A stretch of 64,000 bases of DNA from Oopsacas minuta (Eukaryota > Animalia > Porifera). The DNA lies in NCBI GenBank assembly GCA_024704765.1, contig JAKMXF010000166.1:124001-188000 (forward strand). The letters run 5' to 3'. Under the pieces are notes generated by a model, which saw only the letters and a program-made list of their open reading frames with translations, was not told the origin of the DNA and did not search any database. Of the stretch, positions 37,396 through 62,200 are shown one piece after another. The position numbers and the translations under genes are program-made. Every line of letters starts with the position of its first letter. Position 1 is the first letter of the stretch.

Positions 37396-40300
37396 CTAGC
37401 TAGAAGCTAATCCAGCTAGTAAATAGGACGGGCAATGTATAGAACATAAAGAATTAGAATTCAGTTTGAGAATGAAAATTTCATCTTCACCATTCTGTAA
37501 ACATTGAGAAGTATAAACATGACCGGGTATAGAGAGAAGAGAGTATACTTTGTTAGTTTTGGATTCTAAATTATCAATAGTTATGTCGTTAGTAACAAAG
37601 TTAATATTCGCTTTAAAATTAAGTATGAAACCTCTCTTGACTGGAACATTGAAATTATCGTTGGGTAGCCATAAACTGATTATTGGATCAGAATATGAAT
37701 CTAGAAATTGAGACTCTTTGTGGAGAGAATCAAGGAGAAGTGAAGTTCGTCTGAAAAAACTCAAATTAAGAGCGGATGAATCTTGAAGAGGTGAGACTAC
37801 CCATTTTCTCAACTGACAAAAATGTTCAATAAATTGTTTCAACCATAAAAAGAATTCACTTTTTGTTCCGATTTGGTTGTACATTTCGTCCCATTCATTG
37901 GGTACTGCCTGTTTAGAAAGAGATTCTCCTATAAGGATCAAATCTTTTGGTATAAATAAAACTCCTGTTTTCAAATAGTTTTGTAGAGACAAGCATTTCT
38001 CAGAAATATCCAACAAGAGGGCATGCACATCTTTTAATTCATTCGCTATCACATAGTGGAAGAGTGGAGAGTTTGTTTCGAATACTAGATTCAAATCTAC
38101 AGGAAATTGAGTCAGCTGTTGTATAGTTCTGTCGAGTATAAATAGTAAATTTGTGATGTTGAATGGAAGGAATTGGACGTCTGGAAAACACCTGAGAGGT
38201 AGAGTAGTTCTAGGTAGAGGTTGTGACATTTCACTGGAGATAGATAACTTTACACTCAACAAGTCGCTGATGATAAAAAAGTAAGAAGGTGTTGGTAAGA
38301 TACTTATATAAAGTTCTCTCCTTTTAAACTGGTTAATAACTTCATGAGGTACTCCTAGTACTTGTTCGGCAAATATACCATACTTTCGGATTCCTGGCTC
38401 ATTATTGATAGAGTATACAGATGAGATTATTGTGAAAATTTCCTGTTCTTGTAGCGATTGTGTACTCCCTTCATTCGTTTTTAAAGTAAGAACTTTTTCC
38501 AAAGATGTGATGAGTAAATCAATGGACAAATTTGCTATCGAACAACGTAAACAATTCCGTTTTGTAATAAGTGAGCAATGAAATAGAATAACTAAATAGC
38601 AAGTATGCTCCATTGGGTGAGACAGGATCTTTAGTTTAGTTTCCATAGGAAGGGAATCATACACACACTCAAATACATGATATATACTGGGGTATATATA
38701 TTCAGTATAAGAAATATGAGAGAATAATCCAAATTCAATATTTTCAATAGGAAATATGGATATAACCTCAGGGAGGGATTCAGATAAATCGTCACACCAT
38801 TCTCCATAGAGTACAATGTTAATTGGCTTATGTGACATTGAAAATAATTTTGAGAAGAAAGATTCGCGATTGCCCTTCTTTACCAAATGGAATTCTTTAA
38901 AAAGAAGCAAATGAGCGCTCGAGAAATCATCAAAGTTTGGAAGAGATGTTGATAAGTCCAAGTGTGAGAATGATTTTACTTCTATCCCCTGAGTTGTGTA
39001 AAGTGATGCAAGTTCATATTGGAGAGTTAGAGACTTAGAAATTGCAAATTTGCATTCCTTCTCCATCACAAAATAGAAAATATTTAACTTCGAAGGATTT
39101 GGATTAGAATCGTTAATATTCAAAAGGTTACTAAGAGGGAAGGTACGAGTAGATAAAAAGTCACACTGCAAATTATCTGTAATAAAATCTCTAAAAACCT
39201 CTTCGTTATTTATCGGAAAGAACAAATGTAAAACTATGAGAGCTTCTACGCATAGAATACTATCAGAAGAGCATTGTCCGTCCATTGATATAGGAATAGG
39301 CATGTTCTTGTATGAAGGCATCGAGTTGGAAATCCAGGCACTCCATTCAGTCTGTTGGTCAGTGAATGAGTTGTAAAGCGTTTTAATACAGTTATCATTT
39401 AACGGTGATTTAAGTATACTATCCCATTTAGAATCTTCAATCCAGTCAGGTTTTGATATCTTAGTGAAACTTCCCTTGGGTAGTAAAGGAGAGTTTGATA
39501 GTATTCGGATAATTGAGTATATTAGTATGCTAGAATAATCGTCAGCTACTCCATACACATTAACAATTAATGCTGATAGAAGTAGCCAGGTGAATTGATC
39601 GTGTCGAGTAAGATAAGGCATGTATAACTGAACTGCCTTTGTGACAAAGCTACGATTCAATTTATTCAAAATAACATTAACATTGCCTGATAAAACTGAT
39701 AACTTTTCCTGATTAACTTGTACGTTATCCGGCCAATTGAGATTAGTACAGAACTCTTTGATTAAATCTTCTTGCTGGCTAGCATCTAATATACCTTTTA
39801 AATAATCACTCAAAGTAATACTAGGTTTTCGAGCTATATTACTGGGTTGAATCTTATCAAGATCGTAATCCAAGAATAACTCTTCAACGAGAGGATATAA
39901 CCAGTTCACATTGAGATAATAGTATACATGCATCTCTTGAATGCAACTGAGAGAGCAAGCCAAATTACCTAGTGTATCAGGTATATGGCAGATCTGTGTG
40001 TATACAGAATGAAACGATTTTTCTGTGTATTCTCTTACAGTCTGTACATATGGACGTAGATTCCAAAGGGTGACTAGCTCCTGAGTATGCTTGTATGCTA
40101 TTTGAGGTATTTCTGTATCTTGTGGAAGGTAAGAAACTCCTGTATTAACATCGCATCTAAACAACTTAGCTAATAACTGAGCCAATTCATGCTGTACTGA
40201 TTCAAACAAAGTTTCTTTGCTGACTACAAAAGCGAATAGATCCAGCCAAGATTTACTAAGATAATGATTTGTGAGTAATTTGTGTAGGCACACTTCATAG

Positions 40301-43300
40301 CATAGTGTATGACTAGGTAACATGTTTAAATGTAAGGTTTTACTCGAGTAAACGGATGGATAACAGAATGAGGGAGTATTCATTGAAAAGACAAGACTCA
40401 AATGTTTATTCGCTACTAATGTTCTACCAGCTAACTGAATAGGATTTTTTGTATCTCTGTTCTCTTTGAAAACAGAAGCAAATTCCAATAACGGATATAA
40501 CACAGGGTCTTTAATCGTGTCCAAATGATTGATAATTAGCGAATTACCTTTCAATATAGAGTCCCTAAGTGTATCATATAAATGTGGATCTGAACAAGCG
40601 AGATCTATTTCGGTTGTATTCTGCCGATTGGTGAATTCTGATAGTTTGTATGGAGAAGAAGATGAAATGCTTACCCAAGAGGAGCTAGATTCATTCAGGT
40701 ATTCTTTTGAAATAGCAAAAGAGATTGATTTGAGTGGGGTAAGATGGTCATTAACACTGTTGTGGAATATAAAATAGCAAATAGAATTGAGTATTTGAAA
40801 ATAATTAGAGGATGTTTGTGATTTATAAGGCATTATCCCAGGAATACAATCAAATCCAACTATATTATTCATTCTGAAATTTAACGCTTCCTTCCAGTTG
40901 GTTTTAAGACTGAGTTTTTCAAGGGACTTCGGCCAAACGTGTAGAAGAATATGTATTTGATCCTGAATAGGGAAAGAAGATAGGATACAGAGATAACCGT
41001 AAGAGATGGCAGATGCGGTGATAAGGGAGGTAACCTCTTCATCTGACATTTGAGCATATGCACGCCATTTTTCTGGGATAGTCCCGAGATCTTCAATCAG
41101 AGAAGATATAGATTGTAAATCCACACTTTGTTTCTCGTATGAATCTATGTATTCAGTTAAGGAAAGTGAAGAATGGTAAAAAGATTGATCCAAATTTCTC
41201 TTACTGTCACTAAACGATCTTATCTTTGTTCTAAGCGAATCAGTCAAACTATTGAATTTCACAAGAGATTCAAGATTACACTCAATTCGATCTTTCAATG
41301 GATTAACTTTATGTAATATTACCTCGTAATAGTTTGCTATAGCTCTTAGCCAACTGGAAATTTTATCGATCAAATCATGAAGTTCTGAGTCTGGAGTTAC
41401 AGTATTGCCTGATACGATATCTTGTTGGAGAACTTCGTAAATAGATTCAAGGGTATCTTCTGATAGTTCGTCAGTGTTGGAATGAAAATCAACAATTTGA
41501 GAAAGGAACCTTTCGGAATTGGACAGAAGTCTACGAATAGTACGATTCAATGGTTGAGTATCAGTACCCGATTTAAAGAGGGAAATAAATACAGTTAGCA
41601 AATGGGATAGTTCTGGTTCTTTACTGTTCGCCCTGAGCCATTCAATGTCATGATTGTTAAACTTGTTTGTAGCTTTAACAATCATTTCAATTTTGTTCTT
41701 ACTCTCTAGGATTGCTAGTTGTAAAGCATCATCTATTTTAGGGTGAGTTTTGTCCAGAAATTCAATATTCTGTTCGAGCCTTTGAAGTGAAGTTAAAGTT
41801 TGAGAAATATTGAGCTCAAGCTGGCCAATAAGTTTAATGAAATCTGAACATGAAGCTTTCTTATCTTTGTACACGAATTCACGATTGGGATACTCTAATT
41901 CGAAATTATCTTTAGTCTTTTGGATTGATGCTAGAATACTGAGTGCACATTGTATAATTTTTTGCTGAGACAATATTCTTCCATAAATAATCCCAAAGTT
42001 GATACTAAATGTAACAGCGAATTTATTAAAACTGTTGTTCCCAGGAATATAGCTATAGTTGTAGTTTAGATTCTTACATAAATCAGTGAATAAGGTCGGT
42101 AAGAGTTCAACTATTAGATCATGTATCCGCGGTTTCAATACAGTATGTTTGGGGTAATGCTGCTTCATCGCTTGTTCACAAACTTTGGTAAGCTGTGTAT
42201 GGTCCAACTTTGGACATACAATACATTTCAATCTATTGAATAGGGAGGGCACTGAGTGTATCAGCTGATAGAAATTAATATCTATTTCCTTAACATTAAT
42301 TACTATTCTAAGATTTTTAGTGACGTTACTCAGGAATATTTTCCAAGCTAGCGATTCACTGAAAACCTGTGATAATTTTGATATGTGTGTTCTCAGGCCG
42401 TTGACTATATTCCCTCTTTGTTCTAAACTAAACAAGGGAGATATCTGACAATCTTCTAAAAATTCTAAAATTCTAAAGAAAAATTGCTTTGATTTCAATT
42501 CTTTGTATTGTACTAAGAGAATAATATTTTCCATATTGATCCCAGCACGTGTGTAAATATCTCGCATGAAATGATCGAACACACCCAAATCGTAAGCACT
42601 ACTTTTCAAGTATATACAATGATCTTCAGTACCTTTTATTTCTTCAGAATGAGATGCAAGAAAGTGAGAAATCCTCTCAAAGGTGAAATTGAAAAGAGAA
42701 GCAAGTAGAGATAGAGTAGAAGCGATCTCTGATTCGCCTATAATGATAAGATTTGAATAATCTGGAGGACTGAATAAGTGTAAAGAAATTCTATTTAACA
42801 TATCTAATCTGAAGGGAGTAACGATCAATTTATTGGCAGCTTGCTTTACAGTAGGTTGGTTCAATAAATTTGGGAGCTTTTCTTCATCTGAATTTATTTT
42901 GTATTCAGATAAAACCCAGGGTGGAAGAGGTATATGCTCAAGGACATTTTCAATGAAAGAGTAGCGCTCAACAGGTTGATTAAGATAGTTCTTTAGCACA
43001 GAACTATCAAAATACTTGTGTATAAGTCTTGTCTTTAACTGTCTGAATAGAAGAGTGTCATTACAATTAACAAGCTTATGTTCATATAGCCAGTATACTT
43101 CATGATTCCAAAGTTGTAAAAAATCACGAATTGGACAGTTTGGTTCGAGTATCAGACATAGGGAACGGAATAAGTTACTGATATCACTTAGAGTGAATAG
43201 GTACAAACTGCGCTCCTGTGTGCCTACAAACATGCTTTTCAAAGAGATTTGCATTTCAACAGTCAGTGAGACAATAGATTGTATAAAAGATTGATTGGTA

Positions 43301-46300
43301 GAAGGATTGTTCGATCTTTTAGAATCTAACAGTTCGCCGTTGAAAAAACATCTAATAAGCTTGCTGAATATTGAGACCTGAGAATTGAATGTAGCGTATT
43401 GGTAATGGTGGATGAAAAAATGAGAAGTAAATCTACTTCTAAGATTTGTAAGTTTTGAGTTACAGGTAACAATGAAGTTTACATGCTGGATATCTTTCCA
43501 GGAATATGTATTGAAATCAAACAATTCGTTGACATACGATATCCATCTCAGCATCTCTGTAACGGAATTTGTAGTTCGATCAGAAACGTCTACCAGATGA
43601 ATATCTTCTACTAGCATGTGTAGTTTCCGGTTGCCGCGAGGGACATATAAACTTTTCGTAGCACTCCAAACTAACTCTGTTTGGAGCACTTCCCATAGGT
43701 CTTGACTTGAAGAGCGAGAATTGCATTTGAACTTTTTCGAGTATTTCTGATCGAAATAGGAACTTTCTAACCGTTTAGAAAGATGGTCGGTAAGAAGAGA
43801 TTTACCAGAACCAACATCACCAGAAATCAATATGGGAATAGTATTTGTAGAGAGATAATCAAAAAGACACACAATAGTCTCTGTCTCTGGATCTGTTATA
43901 AAAGGCATTTGAGTAAACAAATTTTCTTTTGAACAAGTAAAGTTTCCTAGCCTTGGAACTGCTAGAGACTGAGAATCAAAATTAGGAACAAACGACCATA
44001 TATTCGAACCTTTCGGAAATGTATACGGACCTTGGAACAACTCTTGCCAAATTGTACTAAAGAATATTCTAGAATTTTGATCTAGACACCCTCCAATAGC
44101 CCAAACTGCAGCAAAATTGAATAAAACCTCTTTAAATATCTTGGAGGGTTTTGGATAAGTAAGTATAAGGGAATCGAGAAGTGCGACTAGAGAAGATATC
44201 ACACAAACTTGATTCAACTGAACAACAAATTTGAGCTCTGTTTTAAGAAGATTTTTCTTTGTGCTACATGATAATTTCTTCAAAGTAATTTCATCAGATT
44301 CTGGGCTATTCCGGAATAAACAAGTCATAATTACGGGGAGATATGTATCAAATATGGATTGCCATTGAAATGATTCATTTTCTAGCTGTTTATCCAACCA
44401 CGAATGGAGTATAGTATTCCAAGATATAATAGATGGAAAAGAAATTATACCTAATTTCGCTATCAAAGATGGAGTTAAAAAGTCTGCATTATCAGACTCA
44501 AGAATAATCCTGACATTTGGTCGGAAAGTCATTTTATGCTTCGTCATTAACGTAATAGCGTAATTCTCAAAGTTAAAAGTAGCTAGAACATCACAGTAGA
44601 ATTTATCAAGAGAACCGTCTATATGAAACCAGTGGTGTTTGGGATTTTTTATCTTTTCGGTTAAAATGACACAATTATCAAAAAAGTGGTCAAGCAGACT
44701 TTTCGTCCACGTTTTTTCTTCCAATTGAATACCGCCGAAAAGGTGATCTCTTGGTAACGATTGTGGAAAGATGGAATGCACATATGCAGAATTTCCGATA
44801 TCCTTGAAGAGACCTGAACAAACACTAAGAGCGCTAGACTTACCACTGGAAGAAGGGCCCAACAGAAGAACCATAAAATGCAATTTCAGAGATTTCCAAA
44901 GTTCTCCTACTTTAGAAACAAAATATTCATCAGGTTCCAACATTCCATACTTCAATACTCTCAAAAGGGCTGGATTTTGTGCAGAAAATTGATGTTGCGA
45001 AGAAGAAATTAAATCTATAGTCAAATCTCTATCTTTATTGTAATCTTCATAGAATAGCGATTGAATCACGTGTTGTAGTTTGTTGATTTGTGAAGGGTGT
45101 AGAAAACAAGTTAAAGAGGGTAAATACTCAATAAGTGAAGAACATATGATTTCAAATTCCTGATATCTAATTTCTTCTTCCTCATCTTTATAACTTACAT
45201 CAATTGATGTTTCTCGGTGAGATATTTCGCTCATGGGTCTTGGATTTGAAATTTGCTCATCACCAGATTCAAACTCACTCTCTTGTGTCTCTAAAGGCAA
45301 GGAGTGGCTGTACCTTCTGATTTGAGAGACAGGGTCGGTGAATTCATTCACTAGCTTCTCTGAAGCGATAATTAACAAATGCCGCAGTTTAAATATTGAG
45401 AAATAAGCCAAGGACTTAGAAGTACTAGTGTTAACTAGTATATTATACATTTCGTAAAACTTATTCAATCTCAATGCGATTTCATGTGCGTTTTGGAATC
45501 CAGACGTGTACAGTAATACCTCTGAAATAACACTAACATCTGGTGATAGAAAATATGGCTTAAATACGTTAACGAAAATGAAATCAGGTGATCGGGTTAA
45601 AGTCATGCATTGTGCAGTAGCCATGACAGCTCCATGGTTAATATCGAATGGAGTGTAAGGTTGTACAATGGGAAATCCAATTTTACTAGACATGTGACCG
45701 GAGAATAAGGCACGTATAGTTTCTATGAATATACTCATTTTAGGTGCCTGTATGTTATCGATACATTGGAAGCAGACTAAAGATCTAGAATTGTATGCTC
45801 CGTATATAAAATCCTTCAAATAATCAACTAAAGTATGACTGGTACATGAATACTCGAAAAGAGGACGACCTAGTAAATAAGCAAATTGTCTAATCGTAGA
45901 CATCTTCCCTGAACCTTGTCTACCAACTAGTAATCCACCAAAATTAGTTGTTAAAGATTGGAGGAGATGGGAGAAACATCGCTCTGTGTTTGGGAAGAGA
46001 ACGAGCTCTTTATGATCACCTTGAAATTCAAACACATAAGGTACACTGAGGCAATGGATAGAAAAATTACAAGTTGTCGTATCATCCTTTGGAAGAAGAT
46101 GTTTTATTGAGCTCTGCCATTCAATGCTAGCCTCTAATTTCGTGACGTTATTGAGAGAAATCAACGACTCAGTCAATCCTTTAAAGTAAAATATGGTAAT
46201 AATAAAATTCTGTACCAGCAAGTAAGTTGTCATTGTAAGTATTTCGTGCTGAGAAGAACTTTCTTCCAATGTATCTTGCTCCCATTCATCTAATACGACG

Positions 46301-49300
46301 TCATCTTTTTGCATTAATTCTAGTGAATCTATATTACCGGAGTGTAGATAACGGTTCAATAGGATAAGTAGCTTTTGGAAACCAGAAAGAGCACACTTGA
46401 GTTGTGTAATATCATCCATGGTTACTAATCGTTGTAGGATAGTACAAAACAACACCCTAGCAATGAGAAGGTATATTTCACTTGATTTAGCCTTCGTCAA
46501 TTCTTTGAGGAGAAAATAAGCTATATTGTTGATATCGAGTCGATCAAAAGGGGTTTCATTAGATATTTTCTCAATTGAAGATGCAAAGTAGTCTTTGAGC
46601 GTATCATGCAGAGTAGCAGAGAAAGAATTCAAAAGACCGGTAACCTTTTCAAAATTGTCAGGTATCAAAGAACTATTAAGTTGTACAATTCCACCATTAG
46701 TAGCAATAACTCCCGTGATTATATATTTATCCTTTACATCTGTGTTACTAATAGCTAATTCATGTACTCCTGGGAATATCATGTGTATGTGTTTACTCAG
46801 GACTTTCACATTAGTGTAATTCGAAATGAAAGCATGAATGTAATAGCTAGAAATAAAATAGAATCTAGGATACAGTGACTTGAAATTCTCATAGTATTTG
46901 TAAATAGCTACACGTGTCTGTCCTACAGTTCGATTGAGCTCCTGCAAAAATCTGAGTCTCCCTTCTTTACAGCATGTACGCATTACGTGAGGATCAGATT
47001 GAACTTCTTTCATTAGAATTCTCCATTGTTTATCAACTACAATAAATCCTATTGCTTCTTGAGTCAAATTCTGCCGTACATCACTCCAACTGAAAAACTT
47101 ATCCGCTTGCATCCAATTATCTTGTACTTCCACCAACAATTTCAAGACAGTTTTAATTCTTTGAAACTTATGTTGCCAGGGTTTCAGATCTTCTTGGAAT
47201 AGGATAGATTCCGTAGAATTCATTACAGTTTCTAACTCGTCGATATGAACATCAAGTGTCTTGAATATTTCAAGAACATTTGTGAGCTTCGGTATCGCCT
47301 CAGTGACTAGAGTATCAAGTCCATCAGTATTTATCCCACTCATCCTAGAAGATATGAAGCCCTTAGAATGACGTCTAATTATGCCCCCAGAGCTTTGGGC
47401 TAGGTTCTCATTACTGGAGTGAGATGAAGAGACTGAAGAAGCAAAGCCAGAAATTGGCTGAGGAATAGAACGTATATAATCTTCAAAAGTTAACAAGTAA
47501 CCATCCCAGACTGTTCTGAAAGTATTAATAATCGTTTCACTAGTTATTTCCGTTCTTGATTTCTCTACGATAGCTTCAATCTGTGGCAAACATAAATGCA
47601 GACCTAAATCAATCAACTTTCCAAACGAGAGTTTCGTCAGGATACTAGCGTCTGTGATTGTAGCAGAACCAACTCTAGGTTTGGGAGATAATTTGAGGAT
47701 AAGTTTCCAATGACTTTCTCGAATTGATGGACTTTGTATCAGTGTAAGGAGAGGAACGGTGCTTTTCAATTCGTCTAAATAATCCCTTATACTCAAGGTA
47801 ATATCCCACTGTGATCCTTCTTGAGGTATCTTGTCAACTTTATCTCGAAGTTCTTGTATTTTTTGTTGAATTTCTTCAGGGGCCTGTTTCTTCCACATAT
47901 CTCGCTTCATATGTTTAGTCGAATGGGTCACTTCTTCAACTAATAGCCATACTCTCCTGATTGTAATGAAAGTATCTAACAACTTTTGGAGAGATGAAAA
48001 ATTCACAAATTGTGTTTCTAGAAAACTTTGTAACTCACAAACGTCTTTTGATTTGTCTTTGAGGTCAGAAAATTTCTGAACATATTCATCAAGTAGTTCT
48101 CGTGCATCTTTCGTAGGACAATCAGAATTGAACAAATATGATCTATAAAACTGATTACTAATAGCAGTCAGTTCCTGTTGAAATGAGTGTAGTTTTTCAA
48201 TAATTTCTTTTTTGTGTGTAGCAATATAAGGTCTTATCCTTTGTTTAGCCATACCAAACACAGCATTCAGGTGATCTAGTTTTTGTGGAGTTGAAACGTA
48301 GAAATCATGAATATCCTGACGTAGAGTAAACTCAAATTTTTCTAAAATGCTGTTGGCACGCTGAAGGGTGCTAAATTTGTGCTCAATATCAGATTGTCTA
48401 TTCCTCATGGTATAGAATATTCTCATACTCTTCATTAGTTGAGGTAGATCAGCTGTTTCAATACCGATTTTAGACACTTCAGGCTCAATTTTCTCGAATA
48501 AAAAGTTCATATCTTCCAAAACCAGTATAACTTTATCTTGCAAGTAGTCACAAAATGTAAATAACCAATTAGCACATAGAGATAATAGAAAAGAGCGAAT
48601 ACCTCTAGCATCGATAACAATAAAACCGATATTCAAATACTGAGGTATTCTCAAAAGTTCTTGTTTCAGAGAATAGTACACACAAATTTCTCTCTCGAAA
48701 TCCTCAAATAATGGCAACGCACTTCTAGAAGATAAGCCTTGAGTGCGAGAATGTAGATTTGGGTATAAGAAGGCGAATTCATTGATACGAATAGTATTCA
48801 GAGATGATTCGTCAGAATGAGAAGTGTCAAGTATCGCAAATTCTTTTTCTTGGGTAATTGGAGAAGTATCTGTCCTAGGTGAAATAAAATTTCTGAAGTA
48901 AGAATTACAATCATTCATCCACAGGAAAGAAAATTGTGAGAATTTCTGTAGTACAGTATGGCAATTATTGAGATCATCTAATAGGATATAATCAAAATCT
49001 GTTATCAAATTCGAGAAAAACATTTCATTTTTTAGAGATTCAATAAATGCACCTTTTGGATGTGAGAAAGGATGTAAACTTGCATTTCGTGTATACACCC
49101 CCATAACCCATGATTTTAATTGTTCGACAAGAGAGGGTGCTTGCCCTTCTGGGTAAGGAGATGGATGAAAGGATAAATTATCACCTGCTACTCTGAAATT
49201 GATAGAAAATAGTCCGTGTATTGAGTGAGCGTTTTCAGGTCCACCACTCAGAGGAGCTAGATAATACTGTATTGCTGAATAAGATTTAGACGTTTGTGAC

Positions 49301-51944
49301 GTAATCCCACGATATAATAACTGGTCAATGTATTGCATGAATTGCTTCCATTGAGTGCAATGCATATTAATACTAAAGGAAGTTGAGATTCTATTCAAAA
49401 TCTGATGGATTTTGTCTCTAGAAGATACAATTATACGTTCGTAGTCATGGCTACCAGCTTTGATCCTCTGTGAAAGTTCTGTAAGAGGGCGTGCAGGAGG
49501 GTATGGAGTAGAACTGAAGAGGTTACTGGGCTGTATACACCATGAATGAATTACATTCTTAATCGAGGTAACACCGTGTTCAGTTTGATTGAGTGTAGGA
49601 TCAATACTCGTGAAAACATAAGTAACCATCTGCTGCAGAAAATCTTTCAATACAAAGCTATTCCAAGTTACTTCAGTTAACCCACGTTCTACGAGTTGCT
49701 TGCAATCATTAATACGCTCAGAGAATAGATGATGTACAGGAGAATTCCTATTGCTCCATATTTTGTTGAATCTGTGTACTGTGAAGAAAAGTTTTGGGAG
49801 CTGTGAGTATAGCTCAAGATTCGAGTATTGTTCTAGAAGTATTCGAAGTGAATGTGGAATCAAAGAGGGAGAGAATCCGAGTTTATTGATGTACTTAGCT
49901 ATGTAGATTAAGTGTACTACATCAGGTTGTAAGCTGGGAATAAGTGTATGAGATTTTCCTGAAGCTACTAACACTGGTTTATGAAGAAGAAGAGAGAAAT
50001 CATCTGATAATTCAGGGTCTATAAATGTAAAACTATTTAATAGCTGTTCCAACTTGTTACGTAAGATCAAATATTCATTTGAAACGTAACCAGAGGCGGA
50101 AAGGTCAAATAGAGTATGAGATATTTGTGTTACAAGTCTGTAAGGAGTATCTAGTCTCTCAACCAATGAACGTAAGTAGAGGTATTTTGAAATTTGAGCA
50201 GGGGCGAAGTGATGAAAACCAGGAAAAGTTTCGTAGTTTGAAACAAGTGAGTGAACTTGCTCAATGTGTTGGCCTAAACTATCGATTAGTTGTACTAAGA
50301 ATTCAATGAGGGATGTCCTGATCATAGGTCGATTTACAAATCTCCCAAATAATTGCATTCTTCTAAGATTTAGAGGATCGCAATTTGAAGTGAGGTATGG
50401 TTTGAGGATGTTAATAATTCTATATTCCAGTTTCTTTATTTCATTACGAAATGCGAAAAATATTCCCTCAAACTTGTCATTATCACCAACATCAAACAAA
50501 GAAGATTCTATCCTTAGTATAGGTTTTAAAATGGAGAGAAATTTTGATAGAATATCCTCTAAATGTTCATCAAAAGTTGCAGAAAAGTCGTTTCCGTTCT
50601 GAATAATCACTCTAATATCTTCAAAATCGTAAATAGTTTTAGCAATCTCAAGAAGATCTCTCAATCGATTGACGATTTTGGAAAATCTTTGGTATATTTG
50701 ATCCTTTCTATTAGGCCATACACAAGGCAGTGGTTTAGAAACTTTATCTAATTCATATTTAGTACGCAAAGCTTCTGGTAGAGCATTAAATTCCAACAGA
50801 TTATTATCCCGCAGTTTATCCAAGCAGTGATCAGCATCAGTCTTAGCATCTGTATAACTACCTTGGAATGTATAGCATAAGAGAAGTACAGATTCTATTT
50901 CTTCAATACTCTTAATCGGGTTAGAGAACAGATCTTCTGGAAGACGTTCTCTCACAATTTCAGTGATTACAATAATCACGCTAGATAAGAGATGAATGAA
51001 ATTAGATTGTATTTGGTAGAAAGAACATTGATCCCAGATTAGGTATAGTAGCTTACAGATCGGTTGGATGTATTCACGACGCGAATCAGGGAGTGCATCC
51101 AAACAGAGAATCATCCATTTCTCTAAGGGTAATAGATACACAAGCAAATCTTCTGATTCGAATAATACTTGTTCAATACTAATATATAGATCATCAATCT
51201 TCTTCACAATCCACGATTTAGATATTTTCAAACTATTATACACGTATAAAAAATTTTCAGATCTCAAAAGATTATAGATTGTCCTATACTTTTTCACCTT
51301 TTGCTTCAAGCTTCTGATCTCTCCTACTGATGTAATAGAATTATTAGTACACAGAATAACTCATTTTCTTGAGGCGAGACAATAGCTTTACTAATACGAG
51401 TCAGCCAACAAGAAGCTAGATCTTCAAACAGAGACGATAGATTAGAAGTATAAGCATGAAACTGTTTGGGTATTATAATATAGGGAAGAGAGAATTCTCC
51501 TGAACTCCTATGTCTGAAACTCCTAGAGATATCAAAAACAGTTTTTAGAGTAAGAACAAGTCTATGTTTATCAGAATCAAGTAGTTTGGATATGAACAGG
51601 TTTAGTATCAACCAATCTATATCTTGTATTGTTATAGGGAGAGTGACGTCAGCAGAAATAAGTGATTCTGATACCTGGTTACTCTGTACTGTATTTATAT
51701 GAGGGTATTTAATATAGTATTGGGATATTACCATATCTTTAGGAGCAGTGCTGAAGGATAAAAATATATCTCCATGGGAGGAAGAGGATATAGAAAGAGC
51801 ACGACGTGAACTACGTCTAAGGAAACCTGTGAGAATGATGCGGTTCTTTGGTAAAGATATTTGTGAGTTCAAATCAGAACTGAAGTGTTTGAGAGAGTAG
51901 GCTAGACGAGCTTCTATCCAATTTATACGTATGTCTGCTTCCAT
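37396..51944 (-). CDS. Highly divergent axonemal-type dynein heavy chain-like protein, about 4,827 aa, 2 exons
   Basis: Exon 1 51944-51392 (MEADIRINWIEARL...), 65-nt phase-1 intron (A|GTAAAG...TACTAAT...CAG), exon 2 51326-37396. Tail and linker motifs (LTEVTWNS, SIRESHW, WQHKF..VQDNW, YPRFYFIS), P-loops GRQGSGKM, GPSSSGKS and GDVGSGKS, stalk coiled coils, C-terminal domain. Confidence 0.88.
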
Positions 51945-52261
51945 CACACCAGTGATATAAGCTTTAAAGTATAAATAATACAACAACAACAACAGTGTAT
52001 AATATAATTATGGAATTTTCAAATTCAACTAGCAACTTGTATTGTCATAAAGAGTTTGACTAGCACTGTCCAGGATTGTTATCAACAACAATTTTGCTAA
52101 AAATTCATAAGTAGATTGTTAGTCAAACTCTATGTAGTAACCTAAGTAGATAAGTAGAAACTACGATAAAGGTAAATCAACTATATTCATAAACTCATAT
52201 ATTTATTTAGGGTCGAAGTTTACAAAATAGTTAATAGATAAGTGAAAGAGAAGATTAGAAA

Positions 52262-53720
52262 TTATAAGCATGTTAACAGAAATCTTAGTAAAAGAGAGTC
52301 ATCCTTACAATAACCAAAGCTATTAGAATCTTCACGAGATAAAATCTCTTGAAAACCAAGGTAGTTCGGTACTGATTCAGGTTTTTCAAAATTATCAGGA
52401 TCATCTTCAGATAATATTGAGCGGGTAATATCACCATGAGATACATTCAATTGATTCACAAGAGTAATAGTTACTCTACCTTTGAGAGGCCATTTCAGTT
52501 CATCATCGTACTCTCCCTTCAATAGACTAAAGTAGACTCCCAATTGATTTTCATCAAATTCGACACAAAATTTAATTTTATAGCCACAAGAATAAAATGG
52601 AGTGCTGTATACTTCTTTATTTTTATTCCACCGATTATTAACAAATAAAATCTTCCACTCAATGCCTCCAACTAATTTAATATCATTGAATCTGCTTTCC
52701 ACTAAGTTTAGATGTTTACCCATAAAATCCATCTTATGCTGCTGTAAGTATTGTCTAGCAATTTCAACATCACATCCATATTTTGAATAAGGACATAGAA
52801 CTTCTTGGAGAGGACAATCGAATTTAAGATGATACTCAATCAGTCTTCGACAAGTGGAAAAAGTCGCACCGTCTATAGTATTATTTTTACAATTGTTAAT
52901 ACATGTTACAGGATATTCATTACAAAAGGTTATATGAATGTTAACAGAAGAGGCTCGGATTCCTTTCAAGCAGTACTCACAAGGTATCAACCTCATGGGA
53001 CAAGTATTTGACAAATGATCAGGAAGTGATTTCCTAGGAATTCTCTTTATAATATGAGGATATAAGACCGATTCGAAACAGCCAAGAGGGCATGGAAGAG
53101 TAAAATACTGACAATCTTTGAGATGAGGTTGTATTTCAAGAGTAGGTCCAGTCCACTTGCAATCCTCATTCAAGAAAGGACAGTAAATCTACAATAGTAA
53201 ACATATAAATAAATATTAGATAATACTATACTTAATAAACATCAAAATAACCTATCAAACACATAGTTAGAGTATTCATAATTGTGCAGCGAACTGTAGA
53301 ATTAATCAACAGCTGATAAGCATTTTATGATATCAGTAGAAAACTATCATAACCCAAACACGAACGAAACAAACTCAATTAGTTGAACTATCCATATAAT
53401 ATTACCATTCTCTCATCAACAACTGATCTGATAAGATCTACAATATTCCGACCATAAATTCTGAAATTAGCTGGAAGGCACTTATCACAGCGAGCTTGTT
53501 TATTTTGATTCCTTTGAAAGCAACAAGCATTTCTTAACATGCCATCACATAGAGTGCATAGTAGTAATTTCTTCTCAGAAGCTGATACTATCTCTTCTAC
53601 TAACAGTTCTCTCTTCCAACCTCTATAACTAGTAACACCAGCATCTTCCATCTCAACAAACAAGAGATGTTCGAAATCTTTGAGAATATCAGAAGAATCG
53701 TCTGTGGCTCTAAAAGCCAT
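52262..53720 (-). CDS. TRAF-like protein A (degenerate RING, TRAF zinc fingers, MATH), 2 exons, 413 aa
   Basis: Exons 53720-53406 and 53188-52262, phase-0 intron (DERM|IYCPFLNEDCKW). CPMRLIPCEYC and CPLQEVLCPYSKYGC fingers; MATH FYSCGYK..LLKGEYDDELKWP. Confidence 0.9.
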
Positions 53721-54631: not shown

Positions 54632-56262
54632 CTAAAATGTCAAATTAAAATTGTTATGAGAAGATCTTAAAAAAATCTTAATTAGAATAAAGTCATCATT
54701 CAAATACACAGATTGGATATATTTTTCAGAGAACAAATCAGAGAAGCAAAAAGCTATTTCTTTTACTCCAGTAGGTTTATCAAAACTCCTTTCAAGAGGA
54801 TAATCTGTAGTTTCAATGTGTCTAGTATAATCAGGATGTGTATCGGTTTGGTTGACCAGAACAAAGGATATTTTAGCATGGAGAGGCCATTCTACTATAT
54901 GATCATATTTCCCCTTCAAGAGATAGAAGTAGATCACCATCATTTTAGCATCATTGATTTGGATATAAGAACCAAATTTATACCCACAAGAATAACATAA
55001 AGGACTGTAGAATTTCTTATTAGTAACAGCTTTATTCTTTGTATAAGGGAAATCCCAAATAAGTGGAGAACATTCTGATTTAATTAACTCTGACAATGTT
55101 ATGACTAGCTTCGCTTGCTTTTCTAATTCAACCTTTGTTTTTCTTAAATTAGCTGCTGTTTCTGTCAAATCATCTTCCACATAATTAAGATAATAATCAG
55201 GCTTTCCTTGTATTTGTATTTGTAAATCATTATAATTAGTCTCTACAATATTAAGATGATGCTCCATGAATTCCACCTTATGAACTATAATATCTTTTCT
55301 AATAAGTTTAACTTTACATCCATGTTTTGAATAAGGACACATTACCTGCTGAAGTGAACACTCAGACTCAAGATGTGTACGAATCATTTTTCTACTAGCA
55401 ACAAAAACTTCACCATCGACAATACATTTGTTCATACATTGAGTAGGATATTCTAGACAGATCGCAAAATGAGAGTTAATATTACAAGCTATAATTTCTG
55501 CCTCGCAATACTCACAAGGTATCAACCTCATTGGGCAAGATTGTCTCAAATGCTCTCCAACCAACCTCTTTTGAATTTTCTGTATTGTATTATTCAGATT
55601 TGGTTCGAAACAATTAAGAGGACACGGAACAGATACATATAGACATACTTTGAGATGTAGCCGTATTTCAACAGTAGATCCACTCCACTTGCAACCTTCA
55701 TTTAAGAAAGGACAGTGTACCTAACAAGTACAGTTAACTCAAAATTATATCTAAACTGAAGTGACCACTATATTTAATTTGATATTATCGGGCATTTCTT
55801 TTTATCTGAGTTCATGAAAACAAGAGTCGACTGTATGTCCATTGTGCTTTCTTGATATCTCCTTGGGAGATATCAAGAAAACACAATGAACACAAGTTCC
55901 AGGACCCCAGCTGGCAACCCACAGTCCTCTATTATGGTAGTCTATGACCTACATATACTTACCATTCTATCATCAACAACAATTCTGATAAGATCTGCTA
56001 TATTTCGATCATGAATTCTGAAATTGGCTGGAAGGCAAGCATCACAACGAGCTTGTTTTTTATCATTCAAGTGAAAGCAACAAGCATTTCTTAACATTCC
56101 ATCACATAGAGTACACAGTAGTAATTTCTTCTCAGAAGCTGATGCTATCTCTTCTACTAACAGTTCTCTTCTCCAACCTCTATAACTGATAACACCAGCA
56201 TCTTCCATCTCAACAAACAAGAGATTTTCTGAGTATCCGATACAATAATTTTTAGATGCCAT
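54632..56262 (-). CDS. TRAF-like protein B, tandem paralog, 2 exons, 462 aa
   Basis: Exons 56262-55963 and 55720-54632, same intron position (DDRM|VHCPFLNEGCKW). Zinc fingers, coiled coil, MATH CYSCGYK..LLKGKYDHIVEWP. Confidence 0.9.
55840..55888. repeat. Near-perfect 23-bp hairpin in the TRAF-B intron
   Basis: CATTGTGCTTTCTTGATATCTCC-ttg-GGAGATATCAAGAAAACACAATG, one mismatch. Confidence 0.9.
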
Positions 56263-59202: not shown

Positions 59203-62200
59203 TTATTTAGTGAGATTCTGTCTACAAATCTGTCGTTCCCCTTCTGCTATCAGAATATGCATAGCTCTATGTAACAGATAGACACCTAATAGTCTCTTCT
59301 TAGAAACCTCCCACTCACTAACTACCCCATAATACTCTCCTCTCTTAGTGTTTGTAAGCTTATGAAGGCCTATAGCTTCAAGCAGACACGCTTCCCTAGA
59401 AAATGCTTCAACTGCTATAATCCCTTGGAAACAATGCAAAGATACTACACCATGTCCACTAGACCAAATATCGAGTATACGTTGCTGCTTACGGTTAGCC
59501 TGTGACATATTGTTCTCATATGAAATAGCCTCGTATAGATGTGAGTATGGACGAGAACGCTTGCCTTTCCCAACATAGAATATTGATTCTATGAATATCC
59601 TAAATCTGTCTAGTTCTGAGAGATCTGCAATGAGTGAAGGTAAGTTTTGACTTATCCTCGGATCAATGAGAATATAATTGAATGACTCCTTAGTTATACC
59701 CTCTCTCCATGTACAATTTGTAGGAGGATTGTCAAAGAAGTTACACATGTCATTCTCTAGCTCCTGCTTGTTAGGGATAGGCATACTGCCGGTCAGAACT
59801 TGAGCAAGTTCGTATAAATACCCCTGAAAGCAGTTTGATGACTGTAGAGTAGGATCTTGCTTAACTTTAGAGAGATAACGTAGGTATAGGGTACGTGTCA
59901 TTTCCGTAATAGGACCAGGCTGTTCTCCTATCTTAATTAGCTCTTCTCTCAACTGTTGGTCACTGAGGGTGTGCAGATCAGGAATAGAAGGACTTGATGA
60001 CGTCATATGTTCCTGTGTCTGCTGCTGGAGGTATTCATCAAGACCTATATAAGTAGGTGAATCCTTCCAACAAGAGGGGTCTAAATCGAAAGTAGAGTCC
60101 AGAGCATCAGCCGGAGCCCCTTGATAAGGAGGAGGTGGTACATAACTCCCAGCCCCTTTTGGACTGGTGATTGAATCCTGTGCTATCTCATCTCGTATTT
60201 CATCTGAATCATCACTTATGTGAGTATCTAATGATGGCATTACTGGGGTACGATCATACACATCACAGTACTGTACATCAGTTGGATTAGGATCTATAGT
60301 AACTCTACGTTTAGAACGAGGGGTGAGGGCCTGAGAAGGAGGAGGAGTACGTGTAGGGGTCTGAATGAAAGGAGTAGGGACACCTGTGTGTTTGATGCTA
60401 GGGGGTGGAGTATTGGATGGGTTGGGGGATTTGGGGATTGTGGGTGTTTCAGATAATTGTAGTTCATACGGTAGACTCTTGTTTACTTCTTCTAATAGGT
60501 TAATGAATGAATTAGGCGATTGTGTAGGTAGAGAGAATGGAGATGTTTCTAGAGAAATAGGTTCAGCTGTAAGTTTTCTAGGTTTTGAAATAGGTTCTGG
60601 TGTATACTGTGTATTCTTAGAAATAGGTTCTGTAAGTTGTCTAGGATGAGAAATAGATTCTACAGGATATTTCGTATTTTGAGAAATAGGTTCTGGCGTA
60701 TACTGCCTAGGCTTAGAAATAGGTTCTGGTGTATACTGTCTAGGCTTAGAAATAGGTTCTGGCGTATACTGTCTAGGCTTAGAAATAGGTTCTGGTGTAT
60801 AGGGTCGAGGCTTAGAAATAGGTTCTGGTGTATACTGTCTGGGCTCAGAAATAGGTTCTGGTGTATACTGTCTAGGCTCAGAAATAGGTTCTGGTGTATA
60901 CGGTTTAGACCTAGCTATAGGTTCTGGTGTATGCTGTCTGGACTCAGAAATAGGTTCCGTTGGATATTGTGTGATCATAGAGATAGGTTCTGCTGCATAT
61001 TCTCTAAGATTAGAAATAGGTTCTGTTGTATATTGAGTGTCCTGAGAAATATGCTGATTAGAGTATGTAGTACGAGATGTATCAAGGTATGGGTTAGAGA
61101 AGCTGTTAGGAGTTTCAGTAACATGGACATTATCAATATTCGTATAAGCAGTATTTGAGGCTTTATCTTGTGGTCTCTTATTAGCATAGGGAATTGGTTT
61201 GTCAGGTTTGCGAGCTGATTGATCATAAGAACGAGACGTGTCAGATTTGTTATTTAGAGGTGGAGTAGACTGAATGTGGGGCTTAGAGGAGGGTGAGTAT
61301 TTGTGAGAGACTGTAGGCAGAACAGCCTCCAATTTATCTGAATCTTCTTCAGATAATGTAGGATACATATTAGGAGAGGGTATACTAACAGAAGGACCTG
61401 TAAATGTATTATACATACACTCTCTGTCTAGCTTATTACTGATTTCTTGTATATGAGTTATAACAGGTTTTGTATTAGATTTTTTAGATGTTATAGGTTT
61501 AGGAGAACTAGTAGTTTTCTGTGTTGAAATAGAATTAAGTTCAGGTATAGTTTGTGTGCCAATTTCTGTGAAATTAGGAGAATGAGGATCATATACACTA
61601 GATGTATAAGTTGATCTGTTAACATAGTTAAGATCCAGATCTTGAAAGAGTGAGTTATTGGGTTCACTTTGAGTTGATTTTGTGTTTGATTTCGGTTCTT
61701 TGGATTTAAAAAAATTCGGTTTGTTAATTGTCAACTTTGGTTTTAAGTTTATATTCTTGCTTTTCGATACAATTTCACCGATCTTCTGTTTCAGAGGCTT
61801 TTTCATAGTATCAGGAGGTTGTATGTACGATTCCTTCTGTGAGTAATCAATATGTTTATCAAGGTGTTCATCACTCAACTCTTTGTCTAACGGAGAATTC
61901 ATTTCCTCCACAGCCGTATCTATAGTATCCTGCGTGTTGTAGCTATAAGGCTGACTCATACTAAAGTTAAGATGATTCTGGTTTGTATTTTTAAGAATTG
62001 AAACTGGCGTTTTCGTTTGTTTCACAGGAATTAAAGGAGATTCTTTGTCAGATAGTTTATCAGGATATCTCGCGGTTTCAGACACCTTATCAACTTGTCT
62101 GTTGAGTACAACTGGCTGTCTTTCATTCACAGGCTTAACAATAGGAATACCAACTTGGTTTACGTCATACAGATTAAGAACTCTATTTTGGCTATTTCTT

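What the first reader, a model, noticed from the sequence alone, without database searches (positions are those of the whole stretch)
37396..51944. Full-length dynein heavy chain with an apparently dead primary motor site
Seen: AAA1 Walker A is GRQGSGKM (canonical GPAGTGKT, so the Mg-binding hydroxyl residue is lost). Walker B CFDEFN has become CFQCID, the sensor-I TMNPGY region reads TAQCMT, and FRP has become FKP. AAA2 (GPSSSGKS) and AAA3 (GDVGSGKS, VEDIH) keep P-loops; AAA4 has none (IIGESEIAST). The tail, linker, stalk and an MTBD-like segment (FNNHDIEWLRANSKEPELSHLL) remain, and the frame is intact over about 14.5 kb. Established: AAA1 hydrolysis is essential for dynein motility. Inference: a selected, motor-dead pseudo-dynein acting as an axonemal scaffold, brake or tether. 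It may relate to DNHD1 or be a separate outer-arm-derived lineage; the tail looks outer-arm-like by eye.
Basis: partly seen in the sequence, partly recalled or inferred. Interest (0 to 1): 0.7.

Follow-up and report, generated by a model that had tools for sequence, protein, structure and literature searches.

The report
Glass-sponge class-13 dynein, dead motor site
This is an intact, selected gene for a giant dynein motor protein of a glass sponge whose main fuel-burning site is wrecked; it belongs to an already named but barely studied animal dynein family (class 13), and a second "dead" dynein that may be its partner lies 52 kb away.

Summary
Window 37396-51944 (minus strand) encodes one 4,849-residue dynein heavy chain of the glass sponge Oopsacas minuta. 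The only frame break, at 51348/51349, is a 1-bp assembly deletion that all three read sets correct.

In AAA1 every catalytic element is replaced: Walker A Thr, both Walker B acids, the sensor-I Asn, the sensor-II Arg, and the AAA2 arginine finger. AAA4 has no P-loop. AAA2 and AAA3 keep theirs.

Seven syntenic orthologues (53-72% identity) share these changes and evolve at dN/dS 0.12-0.14, so it is not a pseudogene.

It is neither DNHD1 nor the ordinary outer-arm beta chain, which lies on another contig. Tail and motor trees, and a profile of its otherwise unrecognisable C-terminal third, tie it to long beta-like dyneins of sturgeon, gar, lungfish and newt. These fit Kollmar's 2016 class-13 dyneins, whose ATP sites were never analysed.

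A second dead-AAA1 dynein 52 kb away (earlier scan note s1-305018) is alpha-derived, like class 12/DNAHX. Kollmar already proposed a class-12/class-13 heterodimer.

Verdict: a new member of a known kind. Expression, loss of motility and partnership remain untested.

The parts
37396..51944 (-). Whole coding sequence of the class-13-like dynein heavy chain: 4,849 codons plus stop, single exon
   Evidence: ORF listing and translation. Orthologues are single ORFs of 4,826-4,848 aa, plus one model (P0003, 4,741 aa) truncated at its N-terminus. P0001 is the NCBI model at 100% identity.
51348..51349 (-). 1-bp deletion in the assembly (one base missing between these positions). It causes the apparent frameshift and the mis-modelled 'intron' and fusion in the public gene model.
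   Evidence: Three read sets of the same sample carry the extra base at about 90x depth. DNA context. Orthologue alignment across the junction.
47446..51944 (-). Tail (about residues 1-1500), outer-arm beta type, including the Pfam DHC_N1 match
   Evidence: Pfam DHC_N1, E 1.8e-50. PDB matches run through the true tail only for outer-arm beta chains. Beta tails score 100-162 bits against 48-59 for other classes. Tail tree places it sister to beta, SH-aLRT 99.
46066..47445 (-). Linker (DHC_N2)
   Evidence: Pfam DHC_N2, E 4.5e-60.
44956..46065 (-). AAA1 module, catalytically degenerate
   Evidence: Weak Pfam AAA_6 match, 87 bits. Alignments. dN/dS 0.17.
45901..45924 (-). AAA1 Walker A, GRQGSGKM (canonical GPAGTGKT): Lys kept, Mg-binding Thr replaced by Met (Ile in one orthologue)
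45757..45774 (-). AAA1 Walker B position, CFQCID (canonical CFDEFN): both acidic residues lost. An Asp three residues downstream is conserved.
45607..45621 (-). AAA1 sensor-I region, ATAQC (canonical TMNPG): Asn lost
45556..45564 (-). FKP in place of FRP (the sensor-II Arg as named in PMC11785096)
   Evidence: paper read.
43936..44955 (-). AAA2 module. The P-loop GPSSSGKS (44836-44859) is intact. At 44455-44457 the arginine finger that completes the AAA1 site is Lys in all eight species.
42976..43935 (-). AAA3 module. P-loop GDVGSGKS (43798-43821) and an acidic Walker B, VEDIH (43597-43614). This is the most constrained part of the protein (dN/dS 0.076).
42076..42975 (-). AAA4 module without a P-loop (IIGESEIAST at 42715-42744)
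   Evidence: The loss is shared with the vertebrate beta-like proteins.
40906..42075 (-). Stalk coiled coil with the microtubule-binding domain (about 41389-41667), of canonical length with no insertions
   Evidence: Alignment A6. AlphaFold2 model, pLDDT 73.5, coiled-coil arms above 90. Foldseek top hits are dynein stalks, probability 1.0. dN/dS 0.116.
37399..40905 (-). Highly diverged AAA5-AAA6-C-sequence region
   Evidence: No phmmer hit in the PDB. Profile-profile match to canonical dyneins, 96.8-97.3% probability, about 1,165 collinear columns. The clade's profile hits only the fish and amphibian beta-like dyneins. The AF2 model has low confidence.

Best explanation
The gene encodes a full-length axonemal-type dynein heavy chain descended from the outer-arm beta chain. 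It belongs to the old animal side-branch that Kollmar (2016) called class 13.

Shown:
- It has a beta-type tail, a linker, six AAA modules, a canonical stalk with a microtubule-binding domain, and a strongly diverged AAA5-AAA6-C-terminal part.
- AAA1, the site whose ATP hydrolysis drives every studied dynein, has lost the Walker A hydroxyl, both Walker B acids, the sensor-I Asn and the sensor-II Arg.
- The arginine finger supplied by AAA2 is also lost.
- AAA4 has no P-loop. AAA2 and AAA3 keep nucleotide-binding loops.
- All of this is shared by eight glass-sponge species and kept under purifying selection.

Inferred:
- The protein cannot run the normal AAA1-driven power-stroke cycle.
- Through its beta-type tail it joins a two-headed, outer-arm-like complex with intermediate and light chains.
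- Its intact stalk still binds a neighbouring microtubule, possibly modulated by nucleotide at AAA3.
- It therefore acts as a non-motile cross-bridge, tether or regulator, or as an assembly or transport template as proposed for DNAHX, and not as a force generator.
For: - Organism and public gene model.
- Single ORF once the assembly indel is corrected.
- Motif losses in all eight orthologues.
- Selection: dN/dS 0.12-0.14 at dS 0.35-0.78, and 0.08-0.21 in every region.
- Conserved synteny in seven other assemblies.
- Beta-type tail.
- A separate canonical beta gene at C221.
- Exhaustive profile search: the clade representative scores 2,105 bits. The next hits, at 302-341 bits, are long beta-like proteins of newt, lungfish and gar that lack the AAA1 and AAA4 P-loops.
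- The profile of the clade's C-terminal third hits only those proteins, E 8e-25 to 5e-19.
- Trees: glass-sponge clade plus vertebrate beta-like clade, SH-aLRT 99-100, sister to canonical beta at 100.
- Stalk model and fold search.
- Class-13 description and the statement that ATP sites were not analysed: PMC5100056.
- Precedent for a non-motile outer-arm-derived chain: PMC11785096.
Against: - I found no RNA or protein evidence. The sequencing runs found look like DNA, and no listed holder is on record as RNA.
- Loss of ATPase and motility is inferred from motifs only.
- The Walker A Lys is kept, and an Asp is conserved three residues after the Walker B position (CFxC[IV]D), so nucleotide binding or odd catalysis is not excluded.
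- AAA3 keeps acidic Walker B residues and could hydrolyse ATP.
- Equating the fish and amphibian proteins with Kollmar's class 13 rests on his description (beta-like tail, low-complexity C-terminal extension, Metazoa).
- The glass-sponge proteins lack that C-terminal extension.
- All trees used the quick search with long branches. The first motor tree, built without the vertebrate relatives, gave a long-branch artefact.
Confidence: 0.72

Rival explanations
1. It is still a working motor. Catalysis at AAA1 uses shifted residues (for example the conserved Asp after the Walker B position), or movement is driven from AAA3.
For: The Walker A Lys and a conserved Asp in CFxC[IV]D are kept. AAA3 has an intact P-loop and acidic Walker B and is the most constrained module. 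The stalk and microtubule-binding domain are canonical.
Against: Five independent catalytic elements of the AAA1 site are changed at once, including the trans-acting AAA2 finger. No dynein is known to move without AAA1 hydrolysis (established knowledge). DNAHX, with milder changes, is locked and non-motile (PMC11785096).
Confidence: 0.1
2. It is the glass-sponge orthologue of DNHD1 (class 11) or of DNAHX (class 12).
For: All three have degenerate AAA1 sites. In the first motor tree these long branches clustered together. FKP, a sensor-II Arg-to-Lys change, is also seen in sea-urchin DNAHX.
Against: That cluster was flagged as a meeting of long branches. With the vertebrate relatives added, the clade sits beside outer-arm beta and DNHD1 stands apart. 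The tail is beta type, whereas DNAHX is alpha-derived. The stalk has none of the DNAHX insertions. A different gene of the same genome, C166:228477-243575, has the alpha-type tail and a long insert before H3 of the microtubule-binding domain.
Confidence: 0.04
3. It is a decaying or recently dead gene (pseudogene).
For: The window shows a frameshift near the 5' end. AAA1 is degenerate. I found no expression data.
Against: The frameshift is an assembly error. Eight species keep ORFs of about 4,830-4,850 codons free of stops. dN/dS is 0.12-0.14 overall and no higher than 0.21 in any region.
Confidence: 0.02
4. It is merely the fast-evolving outer-arm beta chain of glass sponges and occupies the normal outer-arm position.
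For: The best matches among solved structures are DNAH9, DNAH17 and Chlamydomonas beta.
Against: A canonical beta gene, 53-59% identical to insect beta in the linker region, lies at C221:239496-253600 and groups inside canonical beta. The present clade groups with the fish and amphibian beta-like paralogues instead.
Confidence: 0.02

Closest known systems
Class-13 dynein heavy chains (DHC13; Kollmar 2016, Mol Biol Evol 33:3249, PMC5100056). Represented here by unnamed 'dynein beta chain-like' proteins of Acipenser, Lepisosteus, Protopterus and Pleurodeles.
   Same: - Tail homologous to outer-arm beta.
- Motor groups with them at SH-aLRT 99-100.
- A shared derived C-terminal third, detectable only within this group.
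- Shared loss of the AAA1 catalytic residues and of the AAA4 P-loop.
- Shared derived motifs: EYQG, GKx[ST]T[IV], [IL][DE] after Walker B, LGRxLF.
- Extra residues in AAA5.
- Found only in animals.
   Different: The glass-sponge proteins have no low-complexity C-terminal extension; the vertebrate ones carry 146-581 residues. They are shorter (about 4,830-4,850 aa against 4,780-5,930 aa for the vertebrate models), single-exon, and very divergent. Their Walker A has Met or Ile where the vertebrates have Arg or Lys. The paper did not analyse the ATP sites of this class.
DNAHX, equivalent to class-12 dyneins (Chai et al. 2025 preprint, PMC11785096; Kollmar 2016)
   Same: An animal side-branch of an outer-arm heavy chain with a non-conserved AAA1: the Walker A Thr is replaced by a hydrophobic residue and the sensor-II Arg by Lys. 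It is inferred or shown to be non-motile and forms two-headed complexes.
   Different: DNAHX derives from the alpha chain (DNAH5/8). It keeps Walker B, has insertions that fold back the stalk and disrupt the microtubule-binding domain, carries an AAA4 small-domain insert, and is about 5,270 aa long. The present protein is beta-derived, has lost Walker B, and has a canonical stalk. The likely DNAHX/class-12 gene of this sponge lies 52 kb away.
DNHD1 (class-11 dynein)
   Same: An 'orphan' animal dynein heavy chain lacking the AAA1 Walker B catalytic residues.
   Different: The DNHD1-like proteins show no Pfam DHC_N1 tail in their precomputed domains. DNHD1 forms a separate branch in the tree and is not hit by the profile of this clade's C-terminal third.
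Canonical outer-arm beta heavy chain (DNAH9/11/17; Chlamydomonas beta)
   Same: Overall architecture, tail type, and closest solved structures.
   Different: The canonical chains have a fully conserved AAA1 (GPAGTGKT, CFDEFNR, TMNPGY, FRP, VSR finger) and four P-loops. The sponge has its own canonical copy on another contig.

Membership tests
Class-13 dynein heavy chain (Kollmar 2016) | N-terminal tail homologous to the outer-arm beta (class-4) tail | tested here: met
   PDB tail matches; bit scores by class; tail tree, sister to beta at SH-aLRT 99.
Class-13 dynein heavy chain (Kollmar 2016) | Motor domain forms one clade with other members, separate from canonical beta | tested here: met
   Groups with the sturgeon, gar, lungfish and newt beta-like proteins at 99-100, and this group is sister to canonical beta. 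The profile of the C-terminal third hits only them.
Class-13 dynein heavy chain (Kollmar 2016) | Those vertebrate proteins are the same as the paper's class-13 reference sequences | not testable with these tools
   The paper's supplementary data are not held. Equivalence is inferred from the beta-like tail, the low-complexity C-terminal extension and the animal-only distribution.
Class-13 dynein heavy chain (Kollmar 2016) | Longer AAA5 domain (descriptive trait) | tested here: met
   The post-AAA4 region is 1,560 aa against about 1,390. Inserts of 22 and 29 aa fall in AAA5.
Class-13 dynein heavy chain (Kollmar 2016) | Low-complexity C-terminal extension (descriptive trait, not conserved in sequence; the class itself is defined by phylogeny) | tested here: not met
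   The glass-sponge proteins end at the end of the C-sequence. The vertebrate members carry 146-581 acidic or Ser-rich residues.
DNAHX / class-12 | Descent from the outer-arm alpha chain (DNAH5/8) | tested here: not met
   The tail and motor are beta type. The neighbouring gene at C166:228477-243575 is the alpha type one.
DNAHX / class-12 | Insertions in the stalk and the microtubule-binding domain | tested here: not met
   The alignment is collinear and insertion-free. The model is a canonical stalk.
DNAHX / class-12 | Pre-sensor-II insert in the AAA4 small domain | not tested
   No DNAHX sequence or structure was at hand to align.
DNHD1 / class-11 | Groups with DNHD1 sequences | tested here: not met
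   DNHD1 forms a separate branch once the vertebrate relatives are included.
Canonical outer-arm beta chain (DNAH9/11/17) | Conserved AAA1 catalytic motifs and orthology to the single-copy beta gene | tested here: not met
   The motifs are lost. The canonical beta gene lies at C221.

The most novel reading that the evidence does not exclude
The class-13 chain (this gene) and the class-12/DNAHX-like chain encoded 52 kb away form one heterodimer: a complete 'shadow outer arm' in which both AAA1 sites are dead. Only the class-13 head keeps a normal microtubule-binding stalk. On this reading class 13 is the unidentified second heavy chain of the 'dynein-X' complex seen in sea-urchin sperm. The pair would act as a nucleotide-gated tether between microtubule doublets, or as a carrier or template for dynein assembly, and not as a motor.
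Probability: 0.3. Interest if true: 0.75.

Novelty: new member of a known kind. Interest (0 to 1): 0.5.

Why it matters
Dynein motility is thought to depend absolutely on AAA1. Families that keep a 4,800-residue dynein for hundreds of millions of years after destroying that site show that the dynein architecture has a second, non-motor use.

One such family, DNAHX, was described only in 2025, and its partner heavy chain is still unknown. This gene shows that the beta-derived class-13 family is also AAA1-dead, and AAA4-dead as well, which I did not find reported in the library searched here.

In glass sponges this gene and the alpha-derived dead chain sit on the same contig, and both are compact single-exon genes. 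That gives a concrete candidate for the dynein-X partner. The intron-free templates are also convenient for expression, ATPase, microtubule-binding and structural tests.

Tried and rejected
- **Complex prediction** (N-terminal 450 residues of the class-13 and class-12 orthologues of one species): no answer, score 0.00, partner poorly folded. This is evidence neither for nor against binding.
- **First motor-domain tree**, built without the vertebrate relatives: it clustered all long branches (this clade, the neighbouring dead dynein, DNHD1, P0074) and was flagged as long-branch attraction. I discarded it. A larger 51-row tree did not finish.
- **AlphaFold2 of the last 1,200 residues**: mean pLDDT 51. 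All Foldseek hits are dynein motors, but TM is about 0.17. I use it only as weak agreement with the profile alignment. The alignments given to both models contained canonical dyneins, so the models lean on them.
- **Expression**: the one run search returned four runs of the assembly's own sample with uniform 90x depth, which look like DNA, and one low-depth run of a relative about 3% diverged, of unknown kind. Nothing can be said about expression. In that relative, 17 synonymous and 18 non-synonymous differences were listed in the N-terminal tail. This is compatible with constraint but is a small sample.
- **Segmental duplication of a linked alpha-beta pair**: rejected. The canonical alpha genes (C144, C298) and the beta gene (C221) are on different contigs.
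- **Bufo 'DNAH8' of 5,444 aa**, suspected to be DNAHX: it is a canonical DNAH8 with all four P-loops.
- **Technical failures**: a phmmer run on long proteins timed out and was replaced by BLAST.


Full report
**What is there**

The window is contig C166:124001-188000 of a 61-Mb genome. The protein is 100% identical to an NCBI entry of the hexactinellid sponge Oopsacas minuta, annotated 'Dynein heavy chain 17, axonemal'.

On the minus strand an ORF of 4,637 codons runs from 51309 to 37396. A 206-codon piece starting at the ATG at 51944 lies just upstream in another frame. The break is inside ...ENELFC|V..., where a TGTGT run reads into a stop. Contigs of three read sets from the assembly's own sample (about 90x, even depth) all hold one more base after position 51348. 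With that base the reading becomes ...ENELFCVTNNSITSVGEIRSLKQK..., which matches every orthologue.

The real gene is therefore one exon of 4,849 codons, 51944 to 37396. The public 5,221-residue model is an artefact of this 1-bp assembly error: it invents an intron here and fuses the gene to the upstream TRAF/MATH gene.

**The observation**

Pfam finds DHC_N1, DHC_N2, AAA_6 (weak, 87 bits), AAA_7, AAA_8 and lid domains. It finds nothing for the stalk, AAA5, AAA6 or the C-terminal domain.

| Site | This protein | Canonical |
|---|---|---|
| AAA1 Walker A | GRQGSGKM | GPAGTGKT |
| AAA1 Walker B | CFQCID | CFDEFN |
| AAA1 sensor I | ATAQC | TMNPG |
| AAA1 sensor II | FKP | FRP |
| AAA2 arginine finger (completes the AAA1 site) | AKL | VSR |
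| AAA2 Walker A | GPSSSGKS | P-loop kept |
| AAA3 | GDVGSGKS with acidic VEDIH | P-loop kept |
| AAA4 | IIGESEIAST | GVGGSGKQ |

**Is it alive?**

Seven related proteins (53-72% identity) come from seven other sponge-derived assemblies. Six are uninterrupted ORFs of 4,826-4,848 codons, and one model (4,741 codons) starts late and lacks the N-terminus. All lie in the same gene neighbourhood: a TRAF/MATH array upstream, and an 85-residue ORF, PAP2, a family-21 glycosyltransferase and an Ariadne ligase downstream. All carry the same AAA1, AAA2-finger and AAA4 changes.

Nei-Gojobori dN/dS is 0.12-0.14 for the six unsaturated pairs (dS 0.35-0.78). Every region is constrained. AAA3 is at 0.076, AAA4 at 0.089, stalk and microtubule-binding domain at 0.116, AAA1 at 0.169, and the C-terminus at 0.211. 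A pseudogene is excluded.

**The C-terminal third**

The last 1,200 residues match no solved structure by sequence. A profile of the eight orthologues nevertheless aligns with a profile of canonical dyneins at 96.8-97.3% probability. The alignment covers about 1,165 collinear columns, from the first stalk helix to near the end of the C-sequence, with only two inserts (22 and 29 residues) in AAA5.

The stalk and microtubule-binding domain align without insertions. The AlphaFold2 model has pLDDT 73.5, with the coiled-coil arms above 90. Its best fold matches are dynein stalks at probability 1.0. The model of the last 1,200 residues is poor (pLDDT 51) and is used only as weak agreement.

**Which dynein is it?**

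- **Solved structures.** The best matches are outer-arm beta chains. Only these match through the true tail.
- **Tail scores and tree.** Beta tails score 100-162 bits, against 48-59 for other two-headed classes. In a tail tree the clade is sister to outer-arm beta, SH-aLRT 99.
- **Not the ordinary beta chain.** The sponge has a normal beta gene at C221:239496-253600.
- **Discarded tree.** A first motor tree threw all long branches together and was discarded.
- **Exhaustive profile search** of 1.84 billion representatives with the AAA1-AAA3 profile. The clade's own representative scored 2,105 bits. Next came three hits at 302-341 bits, above all canonical dyneins (268 or less). They are long beta-like proteins of a newt, a lungfish and a gar. 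A sturgeon protein was added later.
- **Shared features of these relatives.** They too lack AAA1 and AAA4 P-loops while keeping AAA2 and AAA3. They share derived AAA1-region motifs and insertion sites with the sponge clade.
- **C-terminal profile.** The profile of the sponge clade's otherwise unrecognisable C-terminal third hits only these proteins (E 8e-25 to 5e-19). It hits no canonical dynein, DNHD1 or the neighbouring dead dynein.
- **Trees with these relatives included.** Sponge clade plus vertebrate clade gets 99-100 support. An ichthyosporean beta-like paralogue joins them. The whole group is sister to canonical beta at 100, and DNHD1 stands apart.

**Literature**

Kollmar 2016 (PMC5100056) defined metazoan class-13 dyneins. 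They have tails like outer-arm beta, longer AAA5 domains and low-complexity C-terminal extensions. He defined class-12 dyneins with tails like the DNAH5/8 chain and aberrant stalks. He proposed that classes 12 and 13 form a heterodimer at outer-arm positions, and stated that ATP sites were not analysed.

The vertebrate relatives carry exactly such acidic or Ser-rich extensions, and the sponge proteins do not.

Chai et al. 2025 (PMC11785096) showed by cryo-EM that DNAHX is non-motile. DNAHX is an alpha-derived chain with a degenerate AAA1 and a disrupted stalk. It pairs with an unidentified second heavy chain that has a normal stalk.

I conclude that the gene is the glass-sponge member of class 13.

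**The neighbour**

A second single-exon dynein of 5,033 codons lies at C166:228477-243575, 52 kb from this gene's start and on the opposite strand. It has no AAA1 or AAA4 P-loop and was noted earlier in this scan as s1-305018. Its tail and motor are alpha (DNAH5/8) type. It has a long insert before H3 of the microtubule-binding domain (read), as described for DNAHX.

Its orthologues show the same identity ladder (72 to 55%). A structure-based test of tail-tail binding gave no answer.

**How it most likely works**

Shown: the architecture, the loss of all AAA1 catalytic elements, retention of the AAA2 and AAA3 loops, a canonical stalk, and selection on every part.

Inferred: no AAA1-driven power stroke; assembly through the beta-type tail into a two-headed outer-arm-like complex; microtubule attachment through the stalk, perhaps tuned by nucleotide at AAA3. 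That would give a static or regulated cross-bridge, or a template for assembly and transport as proposed for DNAHX.

I have no data on expression, localisation, enzymology or partners.

**Verdict**

It is a new member of a known kind. I did not find the loss of the AAA1 and AAA4 sites in class 13 reported in the library searched here. The pairing with the class-12/DNAHX-like neighbour is the lead most worth testing.

Noticed in passing
window 51348-51349: A 1-bp deletion in the public assembly. It makes the public gene model invent an intron and fuse the dynein to the upstream TRAF/MATH gene, giving the 5,221-residue model.
   Followed up: yes
G000:C166:228477-243575 (+), loci L001, L003, L019; 40 kb beyond the window end: A second single-exon dynein heavy chain of 5,033 codons with no AAA1 or AAA4 P-loop. 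It has an alpha (DNAH5/8)-type tail and a long insert in the microtubule-binding domain, so it is probably the class-12/DNAHX orthologue. The public model calls it 'DNAH2'. It is conserved in the same seven other assemblies.
   Followed up: partly
window 52262-53173 and 54632-55564 (-); also L006-L012 upstream of each orthologue: A tandem array of TRAF-type zinc-finger/MATH genes directly upstream of the dynein. Copy number differs between species, from two in this window to four called in 10 kb of L006.
   Followed up: no
P0145 (Chromosphaera perkinsii, 4,745 aa) and P0314 (4,676 aa, unnamed source): Beta-like dynein paralogues outside animals with a degenerate AAA1 (Walker B lost) but an intact AAA4 P-loop. 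They branch at the base of the class-13 group, so the duplication may predate animals, whereas class 13 has been called metazoan-specific.
   Followed up: partly
window 48517-51835 (run X5): Low-depth contigs from a second organism about 3% diverged from O. minuta cover the coding parts but not the intergenic stretch 51996-52731. This could be a transcriptome or simply faster intergenic divergence.
   Followed up: partly
G000 contigs C22, C33, C188 and this window: Several dynein heavy-chain genes of this compact genome are single ORFs of 4,000-5,000 codons. Others (outer-arm beta on C221, alpha on C144 and C298) are split by many short introns.
   Followed up: no
window 59203-63435 (-): An ankyrin-LEM-GIY-YIG nuclease gene (ANKLE1/LEM-3 type), 1,410 codons in one ORF.
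   Followed up: no
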